A model generated the notes under the pieces. The model ran no database searches and was not told the DNA's origin. It saw only the letters and a list, made by a program, of their open reading frames with translations. DNA of 64,000 bases, taken from NCBI RefSeq assembly GCF_006345805.1, contig NC_042999.1, positions 149,854,001 to 149,918,000 on the forward strand, written 5' to 3'. The translations under genes and the position numbers were made by a program. Within the stretch, counting starts at the first letter, position 1, and each line of letters opens with the position of its first letter. Shown piece after piece: positions 4,807 through 43,900 of this stretch. The DNA comes from Octopus sinensis (Eukaryota).

Positions 4807-5169
4807 AAGTAAAAAAAAAAAAAAAGAACAGAAGACGCAGCGAACAGGTTTTGCCAGTTAGAGCACTGAACACTCAGTTTTCACTTTCATTTTTCTTTTC
4901 CTTTCAGGACGGCGAAGGTGCGTACAAACAAAAGTTTTATTCATCGAACTCAGTACACTGAAAAAAAAAAAAGAAACAAGCACACATTATTTTTTTTTCT
5001 TTTCTGTACCTTTTGTTTTTCCTTTGTGCACACACACACTTATTCTTTACTACCCACGAGGTTCACACACACACACACACCAGTACACAAAACACGATTT
5101 TTGATTTGCTTTGTTAGTTCCACGTGTTCTCCACTTCTCGTTCATACCTTCTGCCCCTTTCTGACAAAC

Positions 5170-5918
5170 ATGGCTGCATCAGGTTTGCCTTCATTCACAG
5201 GGGATGCGGGTCTGTGGCTTGCCCAGGTGGAGTCGCATTTTGCCGCACATGCCGTTCCTCCACAGCAGCAGTTGCATCTGCTATATTCGAGTTTGCCTTC
5301 CCGACTCGCCACATCGGTCAGGGATCTCATAATGAGTCCCCACCCTGACGCCACATATGCGTCAGTAAAGGCCGAAATCCTCCGCCACAACATGCGGTCG
5401 GAGGAGAGTCAATTCAATGAGCTGATGGCCGACGAACAGTTGGGGGACAGGACTCCATCCCAGTTCCTGCGCACCTAAAGGAGCTAAGCGGCAACACAGC
5501 AGACGCGCCACTCTTACGGAAGATATTCTTCTCCAGGCTGCCTGCCCACGTGCAGACAATGTTGGCCACGGCACTGGAGTCTGTGTCAGTAGACCAGATT
5601 TCCACGATGGCCGACAAAATATTAGAATTTTCGGGACCATCTCCATCGCGGGGCCTGTACGCATGTACAGAGCCCCCTCGGACACCTTCTCCGACGAAAA
5701 ATTCATTAGCCGAGAAGATCGATGCGCTTACGCAGCGAATCGATGATCTGTGCCGTGCGATCGGGCGCCAACCTCGCAGTCGTAGTTGCAGTGGCTCTGT
5801 TTCCCGTAGTCGGAGTGACTCTATTTCTTGTTCCAGCTGGTGCTGGTACCATTCAAAGTATGCCGAAAAGGCAGAACGGTGTACCCAGCCGTGCACTTTC
5901 CAGCCCTCGGGAAACTAA
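5170..5918 (+). pseudogene. gag: gag, interrupted by a 1-bp deletion near 5473
   Basis: MAASGLPSF..WLAQVESHF..GDRTPSQFLR in frame 1 continues as [33 protein letters not shown] in frame 3 (C-X2-H-X9-C-X3-C). Confidence 0.9.
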
Positions 5919-8900
5919 ATCCGGAGGAGGTGAGCACGTCACCTTCTTCCTTCTCATTTCCCAAAAATCGTACGTTCATTGTAAAAGATCTGGTGTCGAA
6001 GAAATTCTTCATGGTGGACACCGGCTCTTGTTGCAGCATCTGGCCCCTTCGTCTGACTGCAGACAAGCCCAAGCGCTCTTCAATTGTCTTGCATGCCATT
6101 GACTCGTCTCCCATAACCACCTTCGGTCAGATTTCGCTGCGCCTCAACCTTCATCGAGATTTTCAATGGGTTTTCGTCATCGCTGACATCCCGCATCCTA
6201 TTCTCGGCGCTGATTTCTTGGATAGGTTTAATCTATTGGTGGATGTCAGGCGTCGGAGGCTTGATAGCACGACGTCGCTCTCTACGCCGACTGAGAGTTC
6301 CACCAATGCGGTCCTTAGCCCGACATTCTTTGTTGCCACCTATGGAGACGCTTTTCACTCTCTTTTGGCTTCATTTCCGGAGCTAGTGGACATTGCCTTT
6401 CAACCGGAAAAGCCTACCCACTCGACACTCCATTTTATCACCACCACTGGGCCGCCTGTATTTTCGCGCCCACGGCGCCTTGCGCCTGACCGACTGAAAA
6501 TGGCTAGGGCCAAGTTTGAGCACATGCTTCAACTTGGCCTTATACGCCCCTCCACCAGCCCATGGGCGTCTCCCCTTCATTTGGCGCAAAAGGGTGAGTC
6601 TGATTTTCGCCCGGTAGGAGACTATCGACGCCTCAATGCCGTAACACTAGCCGAAAGATATCCAATCAGAAATCTACAGGACTTTACGGCAAATCTCCAT
6701 GGTTGTACCATTTTTTCGAAGGTCGACCTTATACGCGCGTACCATCAAATACCGGTCAACCCAGCCGACGTTCCGAAAACTGCAATCACTACCCCTTTTG
6801 GGTGTTTTGAGTTTTTGTATATGAGTTTCGGTTTGCGGAATGCTACTAGCACTTTCCAGCGTTTCATTGATGAGGTTGTCTGCGGTCTTGATTTTGTGTT
6901 TGCCTATGTCGATGATATACTCATTGCGAGCGACACACGTGAAAATCATCTCCAGCACCTTTCTCAGCTTTTTCAGCGTCTTCGCGCTTATAGTATACGT
7001 ATAAATCCCGATAAGTGTGTTTTCGGACGCTCTTCTCTAGATTTTCTAGGCCATCATATTGATTCGAGTGGAATCAGCCCCCTGTCGTCAAAGGTCGATG
7101 CCATTCAACGCATCGCACCCCCCACTTCCTTGCGCCAGCTCAGGCATTATCTAGGGATGATCAATTTCTACAGACGTTTTATTCCCGGTTGTGCAGATAA
7201 GCTACTTCCTCTCACCAGGCTATTAAAGAACACTCCTAGAAAGGACGGTCAAGTCACCCTCTCTGTTGAGGCACTGACAGCCTTTGAGTCCATTAAGAAG
7301 GAGCTGGCTTCTGTTTCTTTGCTTGCACATCCGGTTCCTGGTGCTTCTCTCTCTTTGACTGTAGACGCATCGGACACTGCGATTGGCGCTGTGTTACAAC
7401 ACACAGTGGATGATCATATTCGACCTCTGACTTTCTTTTCCCGCCAACTGCAACCAGCTGAACGACGATACAGCACCTTTGATCGTGAGCTCCTAGCGAT
7501 CTATCTATCGGTTCGTCATTTCCAGCATCAACTCGAAGGGCGAGATTTTGTGATCTATACGGATCACAAGCCCCTTACGTTTGCCCTGTGTTCAAAAACG
7601 GACAAACTCTCGCCTCGTGCTTTCCGGCACCTGGATTTTATCTCTCAATTCACTAGTAACATTCGACACATACCTGGAAAAGAGAACGTTCCTGCTGACG
7701 CTCTCTCTCACCTTCAAGTCTGCGCCCTTTTGTCTCCTGCTGCTATCGACTTAACTGCCATCTCGCAGGAGCAGCCACCTTTGGCGTCGTTAGACTTAAC
7801 TTCTCCCAAGTTCTCCTGTTGCCAGTTTTCCTACCTTCCGCTTCCGTCAGCCGAAGGCACCATTCTCTGTGATACTTCCACTGGTTCTCCCAGGCCACTC
7901 GTGCCTGAGAATCATCAACGCTCTGTGTTTGAAGCACTGCACTCCTTATCACTTCCTGGCATTGCTGCCACCCTTAAGCTGATCACTGCTCGGTTTTTCT
8001 GGCCGAATATGCGTCGCACTATTACTTCTTGGACATGCACCTGCTCCAAGTGTCAACGGTCCAAGATTCAACGGCACGTTCGTGCCCCGCTTGGACATTT
8101 TCCCCCAACGGAGGCCCGTTTTCGCCATGTCCATATCGATCTGGTTGGACCATGGCCTGTGAGTCGCGGGTTTTCTTATCTGTTAACTTGTGTCGATCGT
8201 TTCTCCCGCTGGCCAGAAGCCATTCCGATAGCAGACATTTCTGCTGAGACTGTTGCGCGAGGCTTCGTTTCAAACTGGATTTCCCGTTTCGGAGTCCCGT
8301 CCAGATTGACTACTGATCGTGGACGTCAGTTTGAAGCTTCGCTATTTCGCGAATTGTCGCGCATTTTAGGTGTGCATCATATCCACACTACCAGCTATCA
8401 TCCAGCGTCTAATGGATTAGTTGAACGGTTCCATAGACAGCTCAAGGCCGCTCTTCGTGCCTCTTCAGATCCACAGTCCTGGATTGAATTTCTGCCAATT
8501 GTGCTTCTCCGTTGTCGGACTGCTGTCAAGGCAGACCTGGGGTTTTCTTCTGCAGAGCTACTGTATGGTACCACACTGACATTGCCTGGTACGATGTTGG
8601 TGCCAGACACTTCCCAGCCCCATGATCCGGCGACCTATGTCGCCAGACTGCGTTCATATTTCTCGAATCTTCCACCCGTGGTTCCCAGGAAACAATCTCC
8701 ACCATCCCATCTCCCACCGGATATGGACACTTGGTCGCATGTTTTTGTTTGGGACGACTCTGTCAAGGGACCACTTGTTTCTCCCTATAAAGGACCTTTC
8801 CGTGTGCTTTCTCGCACACCTAAGGTTTTCACTATTGAAATAAATAGTCATTCGGAGACCGTTTCCGTGGACGACTGAAGAAAGCATACTTTGAGACGTC

Positions 8901-21615: not shown

Positions 21616-22983
21616 TTAAATAAAATCATCCTCCTCTGTCACCGTCGAAAGGAAAAGCTTATCAAAAACGTCTACATTTCGGCAATTATTTGCTGCCTTT
21701 TGTTCTAGTTGAGAAACAAATTTATTGTCTGGTGATGGCATTTCTGAAGAGTTCACTATCATGGGTATAGCATATGATGATGATACTCGTGAATTTACAA
21801 TATTGGATGGTGAATGTAATGAATAAGATGATGACGACGATGGCGAAGAAGCTAGTGGCATGAGAACATCATCTGTAGTCTCATCACTTTGAGATTCAGA
21901 GTTATTGTCTTTGTTAGTGGTTATATTCTCAGTGGAAGAACTATTAGCATTCAAGTCATTTTGGTCCACTGGGGACATTGTTACATCATCAGTTTTAGTT
22001 GGCGCAAGAGATAAATTAACAGGTGATAATGATTCTGAGGGGGAACACGCCATTTCTTGATTCTCTGTTAAACAATTTGTTGTAGTTGTAGTAGCAGAGG
22101 TGATGCCAGCTGAGGTGGTTGCAGAGGTGGTAGTGGCAGAACCGATGGTTGAAAAAGTGATGGCAGTAGTAGAGGTGGGAGTAGAAGGAACAGTGTCCAT
22201 TAATTTCTCACTCTCACTATAATCATACGTAGCAGCAGTAGTTTCAGCATCAAGTGAGTTAGTGTCTTCAATTTCTCCTAACAACGTTTGCAACTGTTCA
22301 TGTACCATGCTTGATTGCGTCAGATTTACCATTCTTCGGCTATCTGACTCCAGAATGCTGTCCAACTCTTTTGATGAAATATGGTAGCCCATCTTAATAT
22401 TCTCATTGAAATCTGCCTTCATGAGCCAATGTGGCTGTTTTGAGGGCCGATTATCAGTCTCCCTCTTTGGTACCCGGAGTGATAATGGAACAAATAATTC
22501 AGAGAAACAATTATAATCAGCTTTCTCCATCAAAGTAGGCTTACTTTCTTCTCCGCTACCATTGTCAGATTCCTTAGAACCTGAATCTGATTCTTTTGAT
22601 GCACCATCAGACTCTTTCAAAGAACTGCCAGCCTCCTCATTGCTTCGTTGGTCACTTGTAGTGAGATAACTTGAATTTTTTGAAGAACTTTCAGAATTAT
22701 CATCATCATTATCACTGGATTCAGTTTTTTCAGAGTTCTGCTGTTCCTTATCTTTACCACTCTCCGTTTTCGCCTCAGTCTTTTCATTTGGTACATTCTT
22801 ATCTTTTACGTCTCTTGCTTCAAAGACAATTATTTCTGTTTCCTCTTCTGTACTAGCTGAGTTTGAAGATTGAGGAGAGTCAGCAACTGCTGACTCATCA
22901 CATTCCTGATCTTTTTCTGACTTGTCGTCTTCGTTTAATTGGGTGGAATTTTCAAAGAATACCAAGAAATCTTCCTCTTCATT
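21616..22983 (-). CDS. per: per exon 21 (last), 455-aa acidic S/T-rich tail containing a second Period_C-like module
   Basis: Poly-T cag acceptor at 22984; ORF 21616-23046; stop TAA. Confidence 0.88.
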   Translation of the reverse strand, partial: NEEEDFLVFFENSTQLNEDDKSEKDQECDESAVADSPQSSNSASTEEETEIIVFEARDVKDKNVPNEKTEAKTESGKDKEQQNSEKTESSDNDDDNSESSSKNSSYLTTSDQRSNEEAGSSLKESDGASKESDSGSKESDNGSGEESKPTLMEKADYNCFSELFVPLSLRVPKRETDNRPSKQPHWLMKADFNENIKMGYHISSKELDSILESDSRRMVNLTQSSMVHEQLQTLLGEIEDTNSLDAETTAATYDYSESEKLMDTVPSTPTSTTAITFSTIGSATTTSATTSAGITSATTTTTNCLTENQEMACSPSESLSPVNLSLAPTKTDDVTMSPVDQNDLNANSSSTENITTNKDNNSESQSDETTDDVLMPLASSPSSSSSYSLHSPSNIVNSRVSSSYAIPMIVNSSEMPSPDNKFVSQLEQKAANNCRNVDVFDKLFLSTVTEEDDFI

Positions 22984-25900
22984 CTGAAAAAAAAGAAAAA
23001 AAAAAAATCGTTTTAGAAAATAATAATAATCAAAAGCAGGAAACAAGGAAACATTTTATTTGAATTTTCTATTAGAATAAAGAAGTGAAAAGAAGTTATA
23101 TAGATATATTTAAATGAAACAAAAAAAACTTTAATTTATGTTCAACACGTTCTCCCTATTAAGTAAAATCTCAAAACAACTCCATGAGACCTGAGAAGTA
23201 ACTAATGAATTGTTTTTGTCTTTCTTTTTTGTTAGAGAACACAAAATATTTGTCATTAACTTAATAATGTAATTAAAGCTTCAATAGAAAGTTCTGTGCT
23301 AATTTCCAATAATACGTGGAATAAGTGAGATTGTTAAAATTGCAATTATTAATTAAATACAGTGGGGATAATGAAAGAAACTTACAATAACTGGTATGTT
23401 ACTATTGATAGTGACTTTGAGATCTTTCAGTTGTTCTTGTACAACTTTTGATTGGTACAAAGTGTTCAAGCGTTCATTGTCTTCTTTTAAAAGATGTTTC
23501 AAAGATTTATGTGGTACAGTGTACTTCATTCGAATATTTGTAGACCAGTTAGTATTCTGCAGCCAAAATGGGTCACGAGGTAAACGTTTATTTTTTCTTA
23601 CACTTCCAGGATCACTAAAAATCTGGAAAAAAAAAAAAGAAAAACAAAATAAGAAAAACAAAAAAAAGAAGTCAATATTTATCTTAACACTTAACATTAT
23701 GAGCTTCAGGTAAACAAACAAAATAATTATAAAAAATATATAACAAAAAAAAAAAAATTTTTTTTTCAGAAAGTTAAAATGTTTGGCAATCACAAGCAGT
23801 CTGTATTTGAAAATTATCAAGATATCCTAAAATTATTTTTAGAATTAAATAGAATATCTTTTATTTAATGCAGGAAATATTACAAAAATAGTCAACGTAC
23901 ATCCGGGCAAGGCGAACTAGTGTTGCAGCTGCCAGTTTCAAGGAGGTACATGAGGGATGAACTAGTTTCCTCTTGAGATGTTGTACTGCAGGAGCTTTCA
24001 GAAATTTTGAGGTTATGTTTACTTAGAGCTCCTTGTAAATTCTAGTAAGAAAAATAAAAACAAAAGGTTAAATACAGGTTGTTGCTATATTTCACAATTA
24101 ATTAAAAAACACAGGTGAAAACTTTGCAACAACTTTTTCAACAATAGTACAATATCTATTGTTGTAAGTAAAATTGTCGAATAATTTATTCAACTTTAAC
24201 TGATACAGACTGTTCAATACACTACTCTAACTCTTGAGTATACTCCCCAACACAACCTAATTTTCAGCAAGAGATTAGACTAGTTTACTTAATACCTTAA
24301 TTCCCCAATGAACCTCTAACAATTCCCAATTGTTACAAAAATGGAATTCTTCTAAAGTAATAACACAAACATAAAATTTACTTCACTCTATCCATTAATT
24401 TTATAATTTAATATTTGTTTTCCCATGCTAGCTTGCCTAAAATGAGAATAAATTTTGAAGCAGGATTTTTATGGTCAGAAGCACTTATCATTAACCCTTG
24501 CCTATTCTCAAGTAAGAGATTTTTATTTCAATGCAATTCGAAAGTGCAGAGCTAGCAGACAATTTTGTAGACAAGAAATGTCAGTGAACTTCACTGTTTA
24601 CAGCACAACCAGAATAATGAGATCATTGTTTGTAACTGAGTTACAACTCAAATATTCAAATAGAGGAGAGAATGATTTAACATTAACTAATAATATAAAA
24701 TCAATTAAGAAAAAGAAAAAGGAAATATTTACCCTTGATGACATCATTGACTCTTTTCTATTTGTATTTGGACCACTACTAGATGTAATCTTGGTTTCTT
24801 GAGATTTACTTTTGGTCAGATTAGCAGTATTATGTGAATATGGAACAGGAGTATTGAATGCATGGAACAATCCAGGGACTGATTGATAGAATCTTCCAAC
24901 AAGTTGTGTTGCTACAAATGGCATACCTTAAATAAACATTTAAATAAGAATGTTATTTTCAAAAATAGTATTAGTAAAAAGAATAAAACATTGCTGGGGA
25001 AGAAATTTAAATTCATATCATTGCTATTATGTTAAACTGATATATGTCCAAATGCGTTTTTTGCAATATTTATTTTTGCTTGCAATAGCCGGTTCTTTTG
25101 GTCAAGCTATCATATCTCCAGCTGCTTTAGATGCCAAGATATCAAAAATTTTCAAAGTGTAGTACAACAGTTTTGCTATGGAATAGTGTAACTATTTTTT
25201 TGTTTTCTGAAAAAGCAATGGTTTGGACTTATGACACTTTTGCATTATAGCAACAATATGAATATTCATGTATGTATGATGTTACTGAGCATGAATGATG
25301 GTGTACACAAAAGTACTGAAAGAAAGATTGGCATTAAAGTATGTAGATGGTAAATAAAAGCATGTGACACATCTAGAGGATTCTAGTTACATAAAGAAGA
25401 GCTCAGAGTTTCAAATAGATGGAACCTTTGAAAAAGGGAGGCACAACCCAACCTGGGCAAATATAGAAAAATGTGTGTAAAATGAAGTTGGTGGTGGCAA
25501 TGGAAAATTAAATGCAAGATATCTATACTGGAGATTCTCTTGACCATTCTGTTGAAATTAAGTTTCCATATAACTGCTCTCCCCATTTTTTCATAACACT
25601 TATCTCCTCACTGTCACTCTTATCATAATGCCTGTGCAACAAGGGATGGCATTGCATTGAATCCATAGATATTCAATGCTCTACTTACCACCAACCTTTC
25701 TTTATCCCTAGCCATGACTCTCTTTCCACTCACTCCTACCACTCATTACTGATATCCATCACTTCCACTCTTACCATTAAGTATCTTTATTTCTATCCAC
25801 CACCCTCCCCCTCCCCCAATTCTATCACCCTGTTTCCCCATCATAATGCACATACTGCTTCTATTCCATCACATTACCAACAATCCTTATGCAGCTGTCT

Positions 25901-40900: not shown

Positions 40901-43900
40901 ATCCAAAGTCACAGCTAGAACAAAAGATCCCTAAGAGAGAAAAAAAGAACAAAAACAATTTAGCTGATTAGGTAAAATTGAGAAAGAGAAAGATCAATAG
41001 AAATTCTTAAAATCTTTTCCTTTTTAGGTAGGAAATATATATTTTTCCTTTAACTTGTTTCAGTCATAGGACTGCAGCACCATACTCAAGAACTGCCTTC
41101 AAGGGTTACTGGATCAACTTTAAACCCAGTCCTTTTTTTTTTGTATTTATGTCTGGTACCTACATTATCAGTCTCCTTTTGTTATTAGATGTAAACAAAC
41201 CAACACTGGTTGTCAAGCACTGTGGACACACACACACATACACAGTAGGTCTAAATGTGAAATCATGTAGTTGAGAAGACAACTTTTTAAACACAATGTC
41301 ATTCCTGCACTTTTATGCATATATATTTTGCTTGCTTCAGTCACTGGACTGCAGCCATGCTGGGGCATGCCATGTTCAAAACTGTCAAAGCATGGAATAA
41401 ACCACGCTTATTAGTTGTTAGGTAACACTAATTGCATCCTTCAGAAATTCCATGCTTTCTATGTCTATCCATCCTTTCTGTTTTGTAGCTCTTTTACTGT
41501 TCACTTTTCTAACATTATTCAGTACTACACATGCACTTTTGGCTTTCACTGTTGTCTTTCTTTATTTGACTTACTACTGCTTTCTATCCCGTCTTTTAAG
41601 CCTTTTCGGACAAGCTGTAGTGCACCTGAGCTTTGTATGCAATAAGCTCATTATTATTATCATCACTCAGAAAAATAAAACAAAGAAATTGAAAAGTAAG
41701 AAAAAACTTACTGGTCGTAGTTCTTCTTCAGCTTCTTTACTCACAGTACCAGTGCTACTGCAATGGTCAACACTATCAGTTGCACTATCTTCAAAGCTGA
41801 ATTTTGAATCATCTTTATTTTCTGGAAAAGGGAAAATAAATACATAAATAAATAATATAAATTACATGGTATTCCTGAAACTAAAAGCAACAAGCATGTA
41901 TCATGTTGAACATCTCAATTTGACATACATATACATAATACTTAATGAAATATATATATATATATATATATAGGCACAACCGGACCTGTTGTACAAATAC
42001 GTTCCTCCTGAAGACATCTATAATTTCACTAACTGCAGTTCTTCCTTTATACTGCTTCCCTTACTCTACAGAACCAATTCATCTGTTATCCATCCTTCAT
42101 CCATTACTACTGTTCTCTCCACCCACATTTTCATTGCTCTGCCTCCTGAGACACTAAATTCTCCTTCCTCCCTCACACCATACATATCTCTGTATTCCTG
42201 CCTCTCTCTTCCCCACCCACTTCTGCAACCCACCCAAACGCATGTATCTCTCTTGACATTCTCGCCCTTCTCTTATCATTTGTATCACTTTCACTATTCT
42301 GCTGCTCCATACTGCCAGTCATCTCCTACTCTCCCCACCTCCCTCAACTCTTGAATCACTGGTCATTCACCATTCACTACATCCACCCTTCAAACCTACC
42401 CAATCTTTACAGTGAGTTGCCTACCTACTGTCTCCTATTCCCAATCTCCCATACTCTCTTGTCGTCTCCATCCATCCAACACATTCCTAATGTTTTCAAT
42501 CACCAGAGTAACTTGGCATTTATTGAAGGATAGCTTCGGAAAACAAGCATAGAAATTTAGGACAAACTTATAGAAATGCTTTGGATAGGCAAAGCTTTAA
42601 ATGAAACAGAAGACAAAAACAGTTAGGTGATAAGAAACATGAGAACCAACCTTTTAACTTCTTCAACTTATCAATGACATGTTGAAGAGCAGACAAGGTG
42701 CCAGTCTTCTTTCCACGTCCTTTTGATGGAGGAAGCATAGATTTAATTTGTTGAATATACGCTTTAACTTTTTCTTTCTTGATTTGCCTAAATTCATTCC
42801 CGGTAACATGCATGCTACTGCAAAAGAGAAAACAGAAAAAAAAAGGGTAATCAAATTAGCCTTTGGTCAATGAAAGAGATTATTTTGATTAAAAAAAGCA
42901 AAAAAAACATTCATCTAATCTTTTTTTTTTTTTTTTACCTTCTACTTGTTTCAATCATTAAATGTGGCCATGCTGGGACACTACTTGGAAGGATTTTAAT
43001 CAAAGGAATTGACCCAAGTACATATATTTTAAGTTTGGGACTTATTCTGTTAGTTTCTTTACCCAAACAGCTAAATTATGGGACATAAACAAACCAACAT
43101 CAGTTATCAAGTAGTGGGGAGGGAAGGAAGGGCAAACACATATCAACATCACTTATATTCATGCATATATAATGCACTTCCATACAGTTTCCACTTATCA
43201 TATTCACTCACAAGGTAGTGATTGGCCCAGGGCTACAATAGAAGATACTTGCCAATGGTCCCAACACAGTAGAAATGAACACAAAACCATATAGTTGCAA
43301 AGCAGGCATCTTAAACCACACAGCCATGCCTGCACCTATATATGGATTCAACAGGTCCCTTCCCACTTTTTTGTTTTACTTGCTGGGTTTTTTGGTTGAG
43401 AGGAAGAGACAATGTTATGGTCTTTGTAGGCACTCATCAGTAAAATTGATGCCATTAATGATCCTCTTGAATCTTTCTCAATCAATGTCAAGAGAAAAGA
43501 CACGAACCAGTGTTGGTATATTCACATCCCTTTAACTTAGCAGTTTGGCAAAAGAGACTGATAGGACAAGTAGCAAGTCTTGAACAAAAAAGTTGATTAA
43601 TTTGACTAAAAATTCTTCAAGGTGGTGTCCCAGCATTGCCAGAGTCTAATGACTGAAACAAGTAAAAGATAAAAGATGTGAATGCAATACTAATTAAGAC
43701 TATCATTAGTACACACAACAGAGAAGTTAAACTGTAAATAAGAAAGTTCATTTAAGACATACCTGCAACCACTTGTTGATGGTTGGTCATCAGTAGTTTC
43801 ACTGCTTAGGGATATGCTTACACTACTAGAACTTCCCCTGAAAATAAAAACAAAAATGACACTTAAGAATATTGAATCACAAAATAATTTCATATTTAAT

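What the first reader, a model, noticed from the sequence alone, without database searches (positions are those of the whole stretch)
22282..23571. PER appears to carry two colinear Period_C (CRY-binding-type) modules
Exon 20 (23419-23571) encodes PFWLQNTNWSTNIRMKYTVPHKSLKHLLKEDNERLNTLYQSKVVQEQLKDL. Buried in the low-complexity last exon (22282-22434) is PHWLMKADFNENIKMGYHISSKELDSILESDSRRMVNLTQSSMVHEQLQTL. The two 51-aa blocks align with no gaps and share P-x-W-L, NI-x-M-x-Y, L-x-x-x-L-x-x-D-x-x-R, L-x-QS-x-x-V-x-EQL-x-x-L (seen in sequence). In mammals the single Period_C region is the cryptochrome-binding domain (established). A duplicated, diverged module could let one PER bind two CRYs or two different CRY types (inference). 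I cannot tell whether this is already described in molluscs.
Basis: partly seen in the sequence, partly recalled or inferred. Interest (0 to 1): 0.8.

Follow-up and report, generated by a model that had tools for sequence, protein, structure and literature searches.

The report
Two CRY-binding-type modules in PER
This octopus clock gene period really does encode two diverged copies of the segment that binds cryptochrome in mammals, but the doubling is an ancient, conserved and apparently undescribed feature of molluscs, brachiopods and ribbon worms rather than an octopus oddity.

Summary
On the minus strand, exon 20 (23622-23386) and the last exon (22983-21616) each encode a Period_C-type core, M1 at 23571-23419 and M2 at 22434-22282. 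The two align without gaps (20/51 identical, z=9.6, 0 of 200,000 shuffles). Each independently hits the mouse PER2 CRY-binding-domain crystal constructs. Both keep the equivalents of Trp1139 and Asp1167, the two CRY contacts that the structure paper names in this region. The exon 20-21 join is in phase, matches the O. bimaculoides gene model, and is read through in a spliced decapodiform mRNA.

The doubling is not octopus-specific. Every complete lophotrochozoan PER I recovered has both modules 220-420 aa apart: 3 cephalopods, 6 gastropods, 6 bivalves, Lingula and the nemertean Lineus. All 17 arthropod PERs have one. M1 and M2 each form near-pure clades, so this was one ancient duplication. 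It covered the whole Period_C unit, meaning the S-rich motif plus the core.

No paper in the searchable library describes it. Binding of CRY by both modules is inferred, not shown. Neither module has the vertebrate zinc clasp. Verdict: real, general in Lophotrochozoa, apparently undocumented, a new variant of a known domain architecture, and of moderate interest.

The parts
23901..24041 (-). Exon 19. It encodes the S-rich motif upstream of module 1 (…SQEETSSSLMYLLETGSCNTSSPCPD), ending at the donor GAT|gtacg.
   Evidence: tblastn with the O. bimaculoides model, 98% identity. The motif is conserved upstream of M1 in all lophotrochozoan PERs and pairs with the motif upstream of M2 in hhalign.
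23386..23622 (-). Exon 20 (79 aa, phase 0 at both ends). It encodes module 1.
   Evidence: Pfam Period_C 43.5 bits; PDB PER2 CBD hits at E=6e-6; tblastn.
23419..23571 (-). Module 1 core (PFWLQNTNW…EQLKDL), equivalent to mouse PER2 about 1137-1189. The Trp1139 equivalent is the W codon at 23563-23565. The Asp1167 equivalent is the D codon at 23479-23481.
22984..23385 (-). Intron 20 (402 bp; gtaagt … polypyrimidine tract, then cag).
   Evidence: The homologous intron (about 800 bp) is seen in decapodiform genomic contigs L002-L007 and is removed in the mRNA contig L010.
21616..22983 (-). Last exon (455 codons plus TAA). It starts with the conserved NEEEDFLVFF motif that follows M1 in all lophotrochozoan PERs.
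22546..22719 (-). S-rich acidic block SSDNDDDNSESSSKNSSYLTTSDQRSNEEAGSSLKESDGASKESDSGSKESDNGSGEE. It is the most conserved element of the last exon and the upstream half of the second Period_C unit. It is probably a phosphorylation cluster (inference).
   Evidence: 93% identical between octopus and decapodiform, against 25-32% for the linkers. The core 'S(D)LTPSD.RS.EEAGSSLKESD' is conserved across molluscs, Lingula and Lineus. It aligns to the M1 upstream motif.
22471..22506 (-). FSELFVPLSLRV motif immediately upstream of module 2. It is specific to the M2 unit.
22282..22434 (-). Module 2 core (PHWLMKADF…EQLQTL). The Trp1139 equivalent is the W codon at 22426-22428. The Asp1167 equivalent is the D codon at 22342-22344.
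   Evidence: It is 55% identical to the decapodiform M2, inside an exon whose flanks are 25-32% identical.

Best explanation
The window holds the 3' half of an Octopus period gene. Its protein carries two paralogous copies of the whole Period_C unit, each made of an S-rich acidic motif, a linker, and a core of about 60 aa.

Shown:
- The two units arose by one internal duplication that predates the split of molluscs, brachiopods and nemerteans.
- Both have been kept under purifying selection ever since.
- Both sit in the same spliced mRNA.

Inferred:
- Each core is a short helical docking peptide for the photolyase-homology region of a cryptochrome.
- It would bind like the N-terminal two-thirds of mouse PER2-CBD. 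The invariant Trp (PER2 Trp1139) would insert into the cleft beside the CRY serine loop and secondary pocket.
- The following helices would run towards the CRY C-terminal helix, where the invariant Asp (PER2 Asp1167) would pair with the conserved Arg.
- Both cores would target the same surface, so one PER chain should engage two CRY-family molecules, or use either site alternatively. It could not clamp one CRY twice.
- The different flanks suggest the two sites differ in affinity, regulation or partner. M1 is followed by DEE.DY.FF. M2 is preceded by the phospho-motif and LFVPL.
For: - Homology of M1 to M2. The homology extends to the upstream motif: hhalign 98.8%, E=5e-17, 118 columns.
- Homology of each module to the PER2 CBD.
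- The Trp1139 equivalent is invariant in 59/59 modules and the Asp1167 equivalent is kept in 56/59. Eight positions (P1137, W1139, Y1153, L1164, D1167, Q1178, Q1185, L1189) are conserved in at least 80% of the modules pooled across M1, M2, arthropods and vertebrates. The roles of these residues come from PMC4157330. My numbering is self-consistent because it places D1206, C1210 and C1213 correctly on P0009.
- Two modules occur in every complete lophotrochozoan PER: Octopus x2, a decapodiform, Haliotis, Patella, Tritonia, Plakobranchus, Nucella, an unnamed gastropod-like transcript, Pinctada, Potamilus, Saccostrea, Mizuhopecten, Mactra, Mya, Lingula and Lineus. An unidentified genome, L011, also has both.
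- One module occurs in all 17 arthropod PERs, including tick, horseshoe crab, ostracod, moth and planthopper.
- M1 forms a near-pure NJ clade (17/18) and so does M2 (16/18). Within-protein M1-M2 identity (26%) is no higher than between species (25%).
- Same transcript: a 5,362-nt RNA-derived contig carries an uninterrupted 1506-aa ORF. The O. bimaculoides model XP_014779392.1 uses the same junction.
- M2 is a conservation island.
- Reciprocal weakening suggests partial redundancy. M1 is weak in Mya (5.6 bits) and Mactra (18 bits) and undetected in Tubulanus. M2 is weak in Patella (16 bits) and Lingula (22 bits).
Against: - No binding data exist for any invertebrate module.
- In mouse, alanine blocks in the N-terminal half of the CBD (the part the modules correspond to) do not abolish CRY binding. 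Mutations in the C-terminal loop and loss of the CXXC zinc clasp do (PMC4157330). Neither M1 nor M2 has that loop or a CXXC (seen in sequence).
- M2 alone is below Pfam's gathering score.
- Arthropods that have both mCRY and dCRY manage with one module.
- Which copy is the orthologue of the single arthropod/vertebrate module is unresolved. Sequence distances are equal, the tree places M2 nearer arthropods but with weak bootstrap, and the flanking motifs can be read either way.
Confidence: 0.6

Rival explanations
1. M2 is a subfunctionalised copy that no longer binds the repressor-type mCRY. Instead it docks a different partner: another photolyase-family protein (light-sensitive dCRY/L-CRY, 6-4 photolyase) or an unrelated clock protein (TIM, CLOCK-BMAL1, a kinase or phosphatase recruited together with the adjacent phospho-motif).
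For: M1 and M2 have group-specific residues kept across phyla. M1 has Trp at the PER2-1145 equivalent (15/18), Pro1156 (15/18) and Lys1165 (15/18). M2 has Ser at 1156, acidic residues at 1161-1162, and Pro1179/Val1182. The conserved flanks differ. The extremely conserved S/acidic block is coupled only to M2. Nudibranchs and oysters have four or more CRY/photolyase genes (PMC6180908; PMC5224872).
Against: The positions shared by all bilaterian CBD cores, including both named CRY contacts, are as well kept in M2 as in M1. Reciprocal decay of M1 or M2 in different lineages fits redundancy better than distinct essential partners.
Confidence: 0.25
2. M2 is a relic. It is an old duplicate drifting inside a low-complexity tail, with no function of its own, and its similarity is retained only by chance or composition.
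For: M2 scores below Pfam's gathering threshold. It lies in a fast-evolving S/T-rich exon. It is weak in Patella and Lingula.
Against: M2 has been retained with the same signature for more than half a billion years in three phyla. It is 55% identical between octopus and decapodiform, against 25-32% for its flanks. The similarity is far beyond composition, with z=9.6 in a unique register. In heterodont bivalves M2 is the better-preserved copy.
Confidence: 0.07
3. Annotation or assembly artefact. The last exon belongs to another gene or paralogue, or is an alternative terminal exon never joined to exon 20, so no single protein has both modules.
For: I could not find RNA evidence for this exact species. 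The O. bimaculoides model is a computational prediction and is even misnamed 'serine-rich adhesin for platelets-like'.
Against: A spliced decapodiform mRNA contig reads PAS through M1 to M2 in one ORF. The splice sites are canonical and in phase. The sequence across the junction (…PVI|NEE(E/D)DFL.FF) is a motif conserved directly after M1 in full-length PERs of many species, including cloned cDNAs such as Tritonia AWY10931.1 and Haliotis QOL70672.1.
Confidence: 0.03

Closest known systems
Mammalian PER1/PER2 CRY-binding domain (mouse PER2 1095-1215; PDB 4U8H, 4CT0, 6OF7; Pfam Period_C PF12114)
   Same: Both M1 and M2 align to PER2 about 1133-1197, covering the Trp1139 anchor helix, the Asp1167 salt-bridge position and helix 3. 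Both follow an S-rich motif, as the vertebrate core follows 'TSKYFGSIDSSE'. Both lie C-terminal to the PAS and CK1-binding regions.
   Different: Vertebrates have one copy at the extreme C-terminus. The octopus modules lack the second clamp arm (Asp1206) and the CXXC zinc ligands (C1210/C1213), which dominate binding in mouse. The octopus has two copies 244 aa apart.
Arthropod PER C-terminal module (e.g. Plutella, Laodelphax, Ornithodoros, Tachypleus, Darwinula)
   Same: The core signature is the same (P-x-W … Y … VL-x-x-D … Q-P-x-x-V-x-x-Q-L-x-x-L) and the zinc clasp is likewise absent. An S-rich 'SSFYSSF.KT' motif lies upstream.
   Different: There is a single copy in all 17 sampled. Mean identity is about 27-28% to either M1 or M2, so neither octopus copy is clearly 'the' orthologue.
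PER of other lophotrochozoans (Crassostrea/Saccostrea, Mizuhopecten, Haliotis, Tritonia, Lingula, Lineus)
   Same: The two-unit architecture is identical, with the same flank motifs. The octopus gene is an ordinary member of this group.
   Different: Published descriptions list only PAS/PAC/HLH and at most one Period_C. The second unit has not been pointed out in any paper I could search.

Membership tests
PERIOD clock protein | Tandem PAS-A/PAS-B, followed by the CK1-binding motifs, upstream of the C-terminal region | tested here: met
   The window exons thread colinearly onto full-length PERs P0109 and P0226, including PAS-B (AITLLGFLPQDLIGMSIFELYHPDDL; WVYVETEWS) and the 'SVTYEQLNYSYNIRR' and 'SLTPEVLRMHTQLQERLYVQQ' motifs. 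P0109 hits Pfam PAS_11/PAS_3.
Pfam Period_C (PF12114) | HMM match at or above the curated gathering score (25 bits) | tested here: met
   Module 1 exon: 43.5 bits, E=4.3e-11, profile positions 92-151.
Pfam Period_C (PF12114), second copy | HMM match at or above the curated gathering score (25 bits) for module 2 on its own | tested here: not met
   Last exon alone: 20.9 bits, E=3.7e-4, profile positions 2-150. Homology is nevertheless established by BLASTP to M1 (E=1e-12), by PDB PER2 hits (E=5e-3) and by hhalign (98.8%). In Pinctada the M2 region is the best-scoring Period_C stretch.
PER2-type CRY-binding domain (structure-defined) | Anchor Trp (PER2 Trp1139) in the 'P-x-W-L' helix | tested here: met
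   W is present in both window modules and in 59/59 modules compared. Its role comes from PMC4157330.
PER2-type CRY-binding domain (structure-defined) | Asp1167 equivalent that forms a salt bridge to the CRY C-terminal-helix Arg | tested here: met
   D is present in both window modules (KEDNE, ESDSR) and in 56/59 modules overall. Its role comes from PMC4157330.
PER2-type CRY-binding domain (structure-defined) | C-terminal clamp arm (Asp1206) and the CXXC zinc ligands (C1210, C1213) | tested here: not met
   There is no CXXC or aligned segment after M1 or M2 in the window, nor in any invertebrate module. These features are described as conserved 'throughout vertebrates'.
PER2-type CRY-binding domain (structure-defined) | Physical binding to a cryptochrome PHR domain | not testable with these tools
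   No complex prediction or wet assay was available. No CRY gene lies in the window.

The most novel reading that the evidence does not exclude
The two units have subfunctionalised. One module holds the repressor-type mCRY. The other, coupled to the ultra-conserved phospho-motif, recruits a different photolyase-family protein such as the light- or moonlight-sensitive dCRY/L-CRY. PER in molluscs, brachiopods and nemerteans would then be a scaffold that physically joins a light sensor to the core repressor. That wiring is absent from both the fly and the mouse clocks, and it could bear on circatidal or circalunar timing in marine lophotrochozoans.
Probability: 0.15. Interest if true: 0.85.

Novelty: new variant of a known kind. 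Interest (0 to 1): 0.55.

Why it matters
How PER and CRY assemble sets the period and repression strength of animal clocks, and all the structural knowledge comes from mammals, which have one CBD with a zinc clasp. A second, independently conserved CBD-type unit in a whole superphylum implies a different PER:CRY stoichiometry, or an extra partner, in the clocks of oysters, snails, cephalopods and their relatives. These are the animals used to study tidal and lunar timing. The finding gives precise, mutable targets for testing this: two Trp and two Asp codons, and a phospho-motif. It also shows that standard Pfam thresholds hide the second unit, and that several orthologues are misnamed in public databases.

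Tried and rejected
- Word-indexed protein search with the 534-aa C-terminus was swamped by low-complexity words and gave only 3 last-exon ORFs.
- The same tool with a PAS-exon chimera gave no hits. With a module alignment it gave only short vertebrate exon ORFs. It cannot retrieve full-length PERs.
I used a cephalopod module profile instead.
- The first tree script never returned. The second used a Kimura correction that produced NaNs and a meaningless comb tree, which I discarded. The Poisson-distance NJ tree is the one I used, and its bootstrap support is weak.
- I tried to decide which copy is the orthologue of the single arthropod/vertebrate module from distances, the tree, flank motifs and Pfam profile coverage. 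The lines of evidence conflict, so I left the question open.
- A literature search for 'Period_C' alone returned mostly 'period c' footnote noise. A six-term search was also uninformative.
- P0227 turned out to be a genomic read-through ORF, not a transcript.
- The structure paper's text lists few PER2 contact residues (one search found none by pattern), so only Trp1139, Asp1167, Asp1206 and C1210/C1213 could be mapped.
- I did not run AlphaFold on the isolated modules. The CBD has no hydrophobic core and is ordered only on CRY, so a monomer model would not be decisive.
- The organisms behind L011 (ERZ25767047) and L012 (GCA_022702875.1) could not be named. No annelid PER was positively identified.
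Full report
**1. What is in the sequence**

Exon 20 runs from 23622 to 23386: …ttttccag|ATT … GTT ATT|gtaagt, 79 codons, phase 0 at both ends. The last exon starts at 22983 (…ttttcag|AAT GAA GAG) and ends with TAA at 21616-21618. The join is therefore in frame and uses canonical splice signals.

I threaded the Octopus bimaculoides model (P0226/P0108, XP_014779392.1) and a full-length decapodiform PER (P0109) onto the window with tblastn. This gives a colinear chain of exons from 43836 down to 21616. One short PAS-A exon between 40285 and 38132 was not located, which is irrelevant here. The window is 85-98% identical to O. bimaculoides exon by exon, so it comes from a congeneric Octopus.

**2. 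Is the similarity more than chance?**

Yes.
- Ungapped, the two blocks share 20/51 identities and 31/51 positives. The BLOSUM62 score is 103, against a shuffle mean of -37 (sd 14.6). That is z=9.6, with 0 of 200,000 shuffles reaching it.
- When M1 is slid along the whole last exon, only this one register scores above zero.
- BLASTP over 58 aa gives E=1e-12 with no gaps.
- Nucleotide identity is only 78/153, and third positions are no more alike than first positions. The duplication is therefore old.

**3. What the modules are**

M1 hits Pfam Period_C at 43.5 bits, above the cut-off of 25. The last exon alone hits the same profile at 20.9 bits (E=3.7e-4), which is below the cut-off. The joined C-terminus gives two stretches.

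Against all PDB sequences, M1 finds the three mouse/human PER2 CRY-binding-domain constructs (4u8h_B, 4ct0_B, 6of7_B) at E=6e-6. M2 on its own finds the same three, and nothing else credible, at E about 5e-3.

I numbered the alignment from PER2 Trp1139. This numbering correctly places Asp1206, Cys1210 and Cys1213 on the mouse-like fragment P0009, so it is self-consistent. On it, each module spans PER2 about 1133-1197.

According to the PER2-CRY2 crystal structure paper (PMC4157330):
- Helix 1 inserts into a hydrophobic cleft, and Trp1139 is buried beside the CRY serine loop and secondary pocket.
- Helix 3 packs on the CRY C-terminal helix.
- Asp1167 forms a salt bridge with CRY2 Arg501.
- Asp1206 and the zinc ligands C1210/C1213 lie further downstream.

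Both window modules keep the Trp (PFW, PHW) and the Asp (KEDNE, ESDSR). Neither has anything resembling the downstream clamp arm or a CXXC.

**4. The decisive comparative result**

The word-indexed protein search could not reach full-length PERs. It did yield last-exon ORFs from other cephalopods. Their genomic contigs show a module-1 exon about 800 bp upstream of the module-2 exon in a decapodiform.

An exhaustive HMM scan of 1.84 billion representative proteins, using a cephalopod M1+M2 profile, returned 118 hits. Many full-length PERs had two matched stretches. I mapped every module locally with an HMM that also includes vertebrate sequences, and named the proteins from cluster records. The result was as follows.

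| Group | Taxa | Modules |
|---|---|---|
| Cephalopods | O. bimaculoides, the window, a decapodiform | two |
| Gastropods | Haliotis, Patella, Tritonia, Plakobranchus, Nucella, one unnamed (gastropod-like) transcript | two |
| Bivalves | Pinctada, Potamilus, Saccostrea, Mizuhopecten, Mactra, Mya | two |
| Brachiopod | Lingula anatina | two |
| Nemertean | Lineus longissimus | two |
| Arthropods (17 PERs) | including Ornithodoros, Tachypleus, Darwinula, Plutella, Laodelphax | one |

The two modules lie 220-420 aa apart in every complete lophotrochozoan PER. The apparent exceptions are these:
- The Mytilus coruscus model and P0216 are truncated and end before M2.
- In the nemertean Tubulanus, only M2 is detectable.
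- An unidentified genome (L011) also has both units, with M1 split by an intron.

Vertebrate PERs have a single C-terminal CBD (stated in PMC4157330). I did not scan full-length vertebrate PERs myself.

**5. One ancient duplication of the whole unit**

In a 63-column alignment of 59 modules, mean identities are:
- M1 to M2: 25%. Within the same protein it is 26%, so there has been no homogenisation.
- M1 to arthropod: 27%. M2 to arthropod: 28%.
- M1 to vertebrate: 27%. M2 to vertebrate: 26%.

A Poisson-distance NJ tree recovers an almost pure M1 clade (17/18) and an almost pure M2 clade (16/18), with M2 nearer the arthropods. Bootstrap support is weak. An earlier tree was invalid and is disregarded.

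Profile-profile comparison of the extended M1 and M2 regions from 16 species gives 98.8% probability, E=5e-17, over 118 columns. It pairs the upstream 'EE-T-SSSL…' motif of M1 with the 'EE-A-GSSL…' motif of M2. So the duplicated piece was the whole Period_C-like unit, not just the core.

Parsimony favours a duplication on the lophotrochozoan stem (one gain) over an older duplication with losses in arthropods and vertebrates. The evidence on which copy is the orthologue of the single outgroup module is contradictory, and I leave that open.

**6. Constraint**

Between octopus and the decapodiform, identity along the C-terminus falls into islands:

| Region | Identity |
|---|---|
| M1 | 76% |
| S-rich acidic block | 93% |
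| M2 | 55% |
| Linkers and S/T-rich tail | 25-32% |

Eight positions are conserved in at least 80% of the modules pooled across all four groups: P1137, W1139, Y1153, L1164, D1167, Q1178, Q1185 and L1189. Trp is invariant (59/59) and Asp is kept in 56/59.

Each copy also has its own conserved characters:
- M1: Trp at the 1145 equivalent, Pro1156, Lys1165, and the downstream DEE.DY.FF motif.
- M2: the upstream LFVPL motif, acidic residues at 1161-1162, and Pro1179/Val1182.

In some lineages one copy is eroded while the other is intact. M1 is eroded in Mya, Mactra and Tubulanus. M2 is eroded in Patella and Lingula. That pattern is what partial redundancy would produce.

**7. Same transcript?**

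- The decapodiform protein P0109 is a 1506-aa ORF that runs uninterrupted for 4,521 nt on a 5,362-nt contig assembled from run SRR27666065. The octopus gene spans more than 20 kb with 21 exons, so this contig must be spliced mRNA. It reads …MPVI|NEEDDFLIFF… straight through.
- The O. bimaculoides Gnomon model uses the identical junction.
- The motif spanning the junction is conserved after M1 in cloned cDNAs of other molluscs (Tritonia AWY10931.1, Haliotis QOL70672.1).
- I found no RNA evidence for the window's own species.

**8. Mechanism: shown and inferred**

Shown:
- There are two homologous, constrained Period_C units in one protein.
- The two named CRY-contact residues are retained in both.
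- The vertebrate clamp and zinc finger are absent.

Inferred:
- Each core docks on a cryptochrome PHR domain in the manner of PER2 helices 1-3.
- Both would address the same CRY surface, so a PER chain would bind two CRY-family molecules, or either one alternately, possibly with different affinity or regulation.

Caveats:
- In mouse, the N-terminal half of the CBD is not by itself critical for binding.
- Arthropods with two CRY types have one module.
- No invertebrate binding data exist.

I put about 0.6 on the combined statement. Within that, I put about 0.9 on the evolutionary and architectural part and about 0.55 on 'both bind a CRY-family protein'.

**9. Known or new?**

- The oyster clockwork paper mentions only the PAS domains.
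- The nudibranch paper mentions HLH, PAS and PAC.
- The 2025 dTIM/PER coevolution paper did not mention a PER CRY-binding domain in the passages retrieved.
- No paper in the 8.3-million-paper library contains 'two Period_C', 'second CRY-binding domain' or similar phrases.
- At relaxed thresholds Pfam shows two stretches in 5 of 7 lophotrochozoan PERs. The feature is therefore visible to anyone who looks, but at gathering thresholds it usually collapses to one.

I rate it a new variant of a known kind. The octopus gene itself is an ordinary member of a lophotrochozoan-wide architecture that seems not to have been pointed out.

**10. Verdict**

The duplication is general rather than octopus-specific, which lowers the surprise for this locus but raises its biological weight. 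Interest is 0.55.

Noticed in passing
window 22546-22719 (-): The S-rich acidic block SSDNDDD…SDQRSNEEAGSSLKESDGASKESDSGSKESDNGSGEE is the most conserved element of the last exon. It is 93-100% identical between octopus and decapodiform, and its core 'S(D)LTPSD.RS.EEAGSSLKESD' is kept in gastropods, bivalves, Lingula and Lineus. It looks like a multi-site CK1/CK2-type phosphorylation cluster with a T-P site. Its function is unknown.
   Followed up: partly
P0108 / P0114 (orthologues, not in window): Public names of orthologues are wrong. The O. bimaculoides PER C-terminal model XP_014779392.1 is called 'serine-rich adhesin for platelets-like'. Plakobranchus PER GFO22066.1 is called 'cationic amino acid transporter'. 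Several others are labelled 'uncharacterized' or 'hypothetical'.
   Followed up: no
window 4918-8878 (+): A 1016-aa uninterrupted ORF with protease, reverse-transcriptase, RNase H and integrase-like motifs lies about 13 kb downstream of the PER 3' end, preceded by a Gag-like ORF. It is probably a recently active LTR retrotransposon. I did not analyse it further or reproduce it.
   Followed up: no
L011 7957-8142 and 8952-9137: In an unidentified ENA genome (ERZ25767047), module 1 is split by an intron between '…FRLPTPNREEV' and 'LLRADRMAL…'. This is within a few residues of where vertebrate PER genes split their CBD core ('…YQLPSR' | 'DL..VLKED', seen in fragments P0019 and P0103). In cephalopods M1 is a single exon. 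A shared intron position could help decide which copy is the orthologue of the vertebrate CBD.
   Followed up: partly
P0158 (Mya), P0132 (Mactra), P0190 (Tubulanus), P0131 (Patella), P0118 (Lingula): The two modules erode reciprocally in different lineages. M1 is nearly lost in heterodont bivalves and undetected in Tubulanus. M2 is weak in Patella and Lingula.
   Followed up: partly
window 43762-43836 and 42652-42822 (-): The N-terminal exons encode '…DDQPSTSGC(R/S)S…', conserved in all lophotrochozoan PERs ('PSTSGCSS'). This resembles the beta-TrCP phosphodegron 'TSGCSS' known from mammalian PER1 (from memory, not tested). A bHLH-like remnant follows (KEKVKAYIQQIKSMLPP…LSALQHVIDKLKKLK). Pfam bHLH_PER hits Pinctada and Lineus weakly.
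   Followed up: no
window 21619-21675 (-): The extreme C-terminus 'VDVFDKLFLSTVTEEDDFI' is another conserved island (58% identical to the decapodiform). It has counterparts in other molluscs ('MDDVFEKLF…', 'IEDIIMSKVFVP…', 'LFEGLFITMFNE…'). Its function is unknown.
   Followed up: no
window 40285-38132 (-): One short PAS-A exon, corresponding to decapodiform 'NQKEKVIYFRLR', could not be located by ORF or tblastn scans. The Ef donor (phase 1) and the Eg acceptor (phase 2) are incompatible without it.
   Followed up: no
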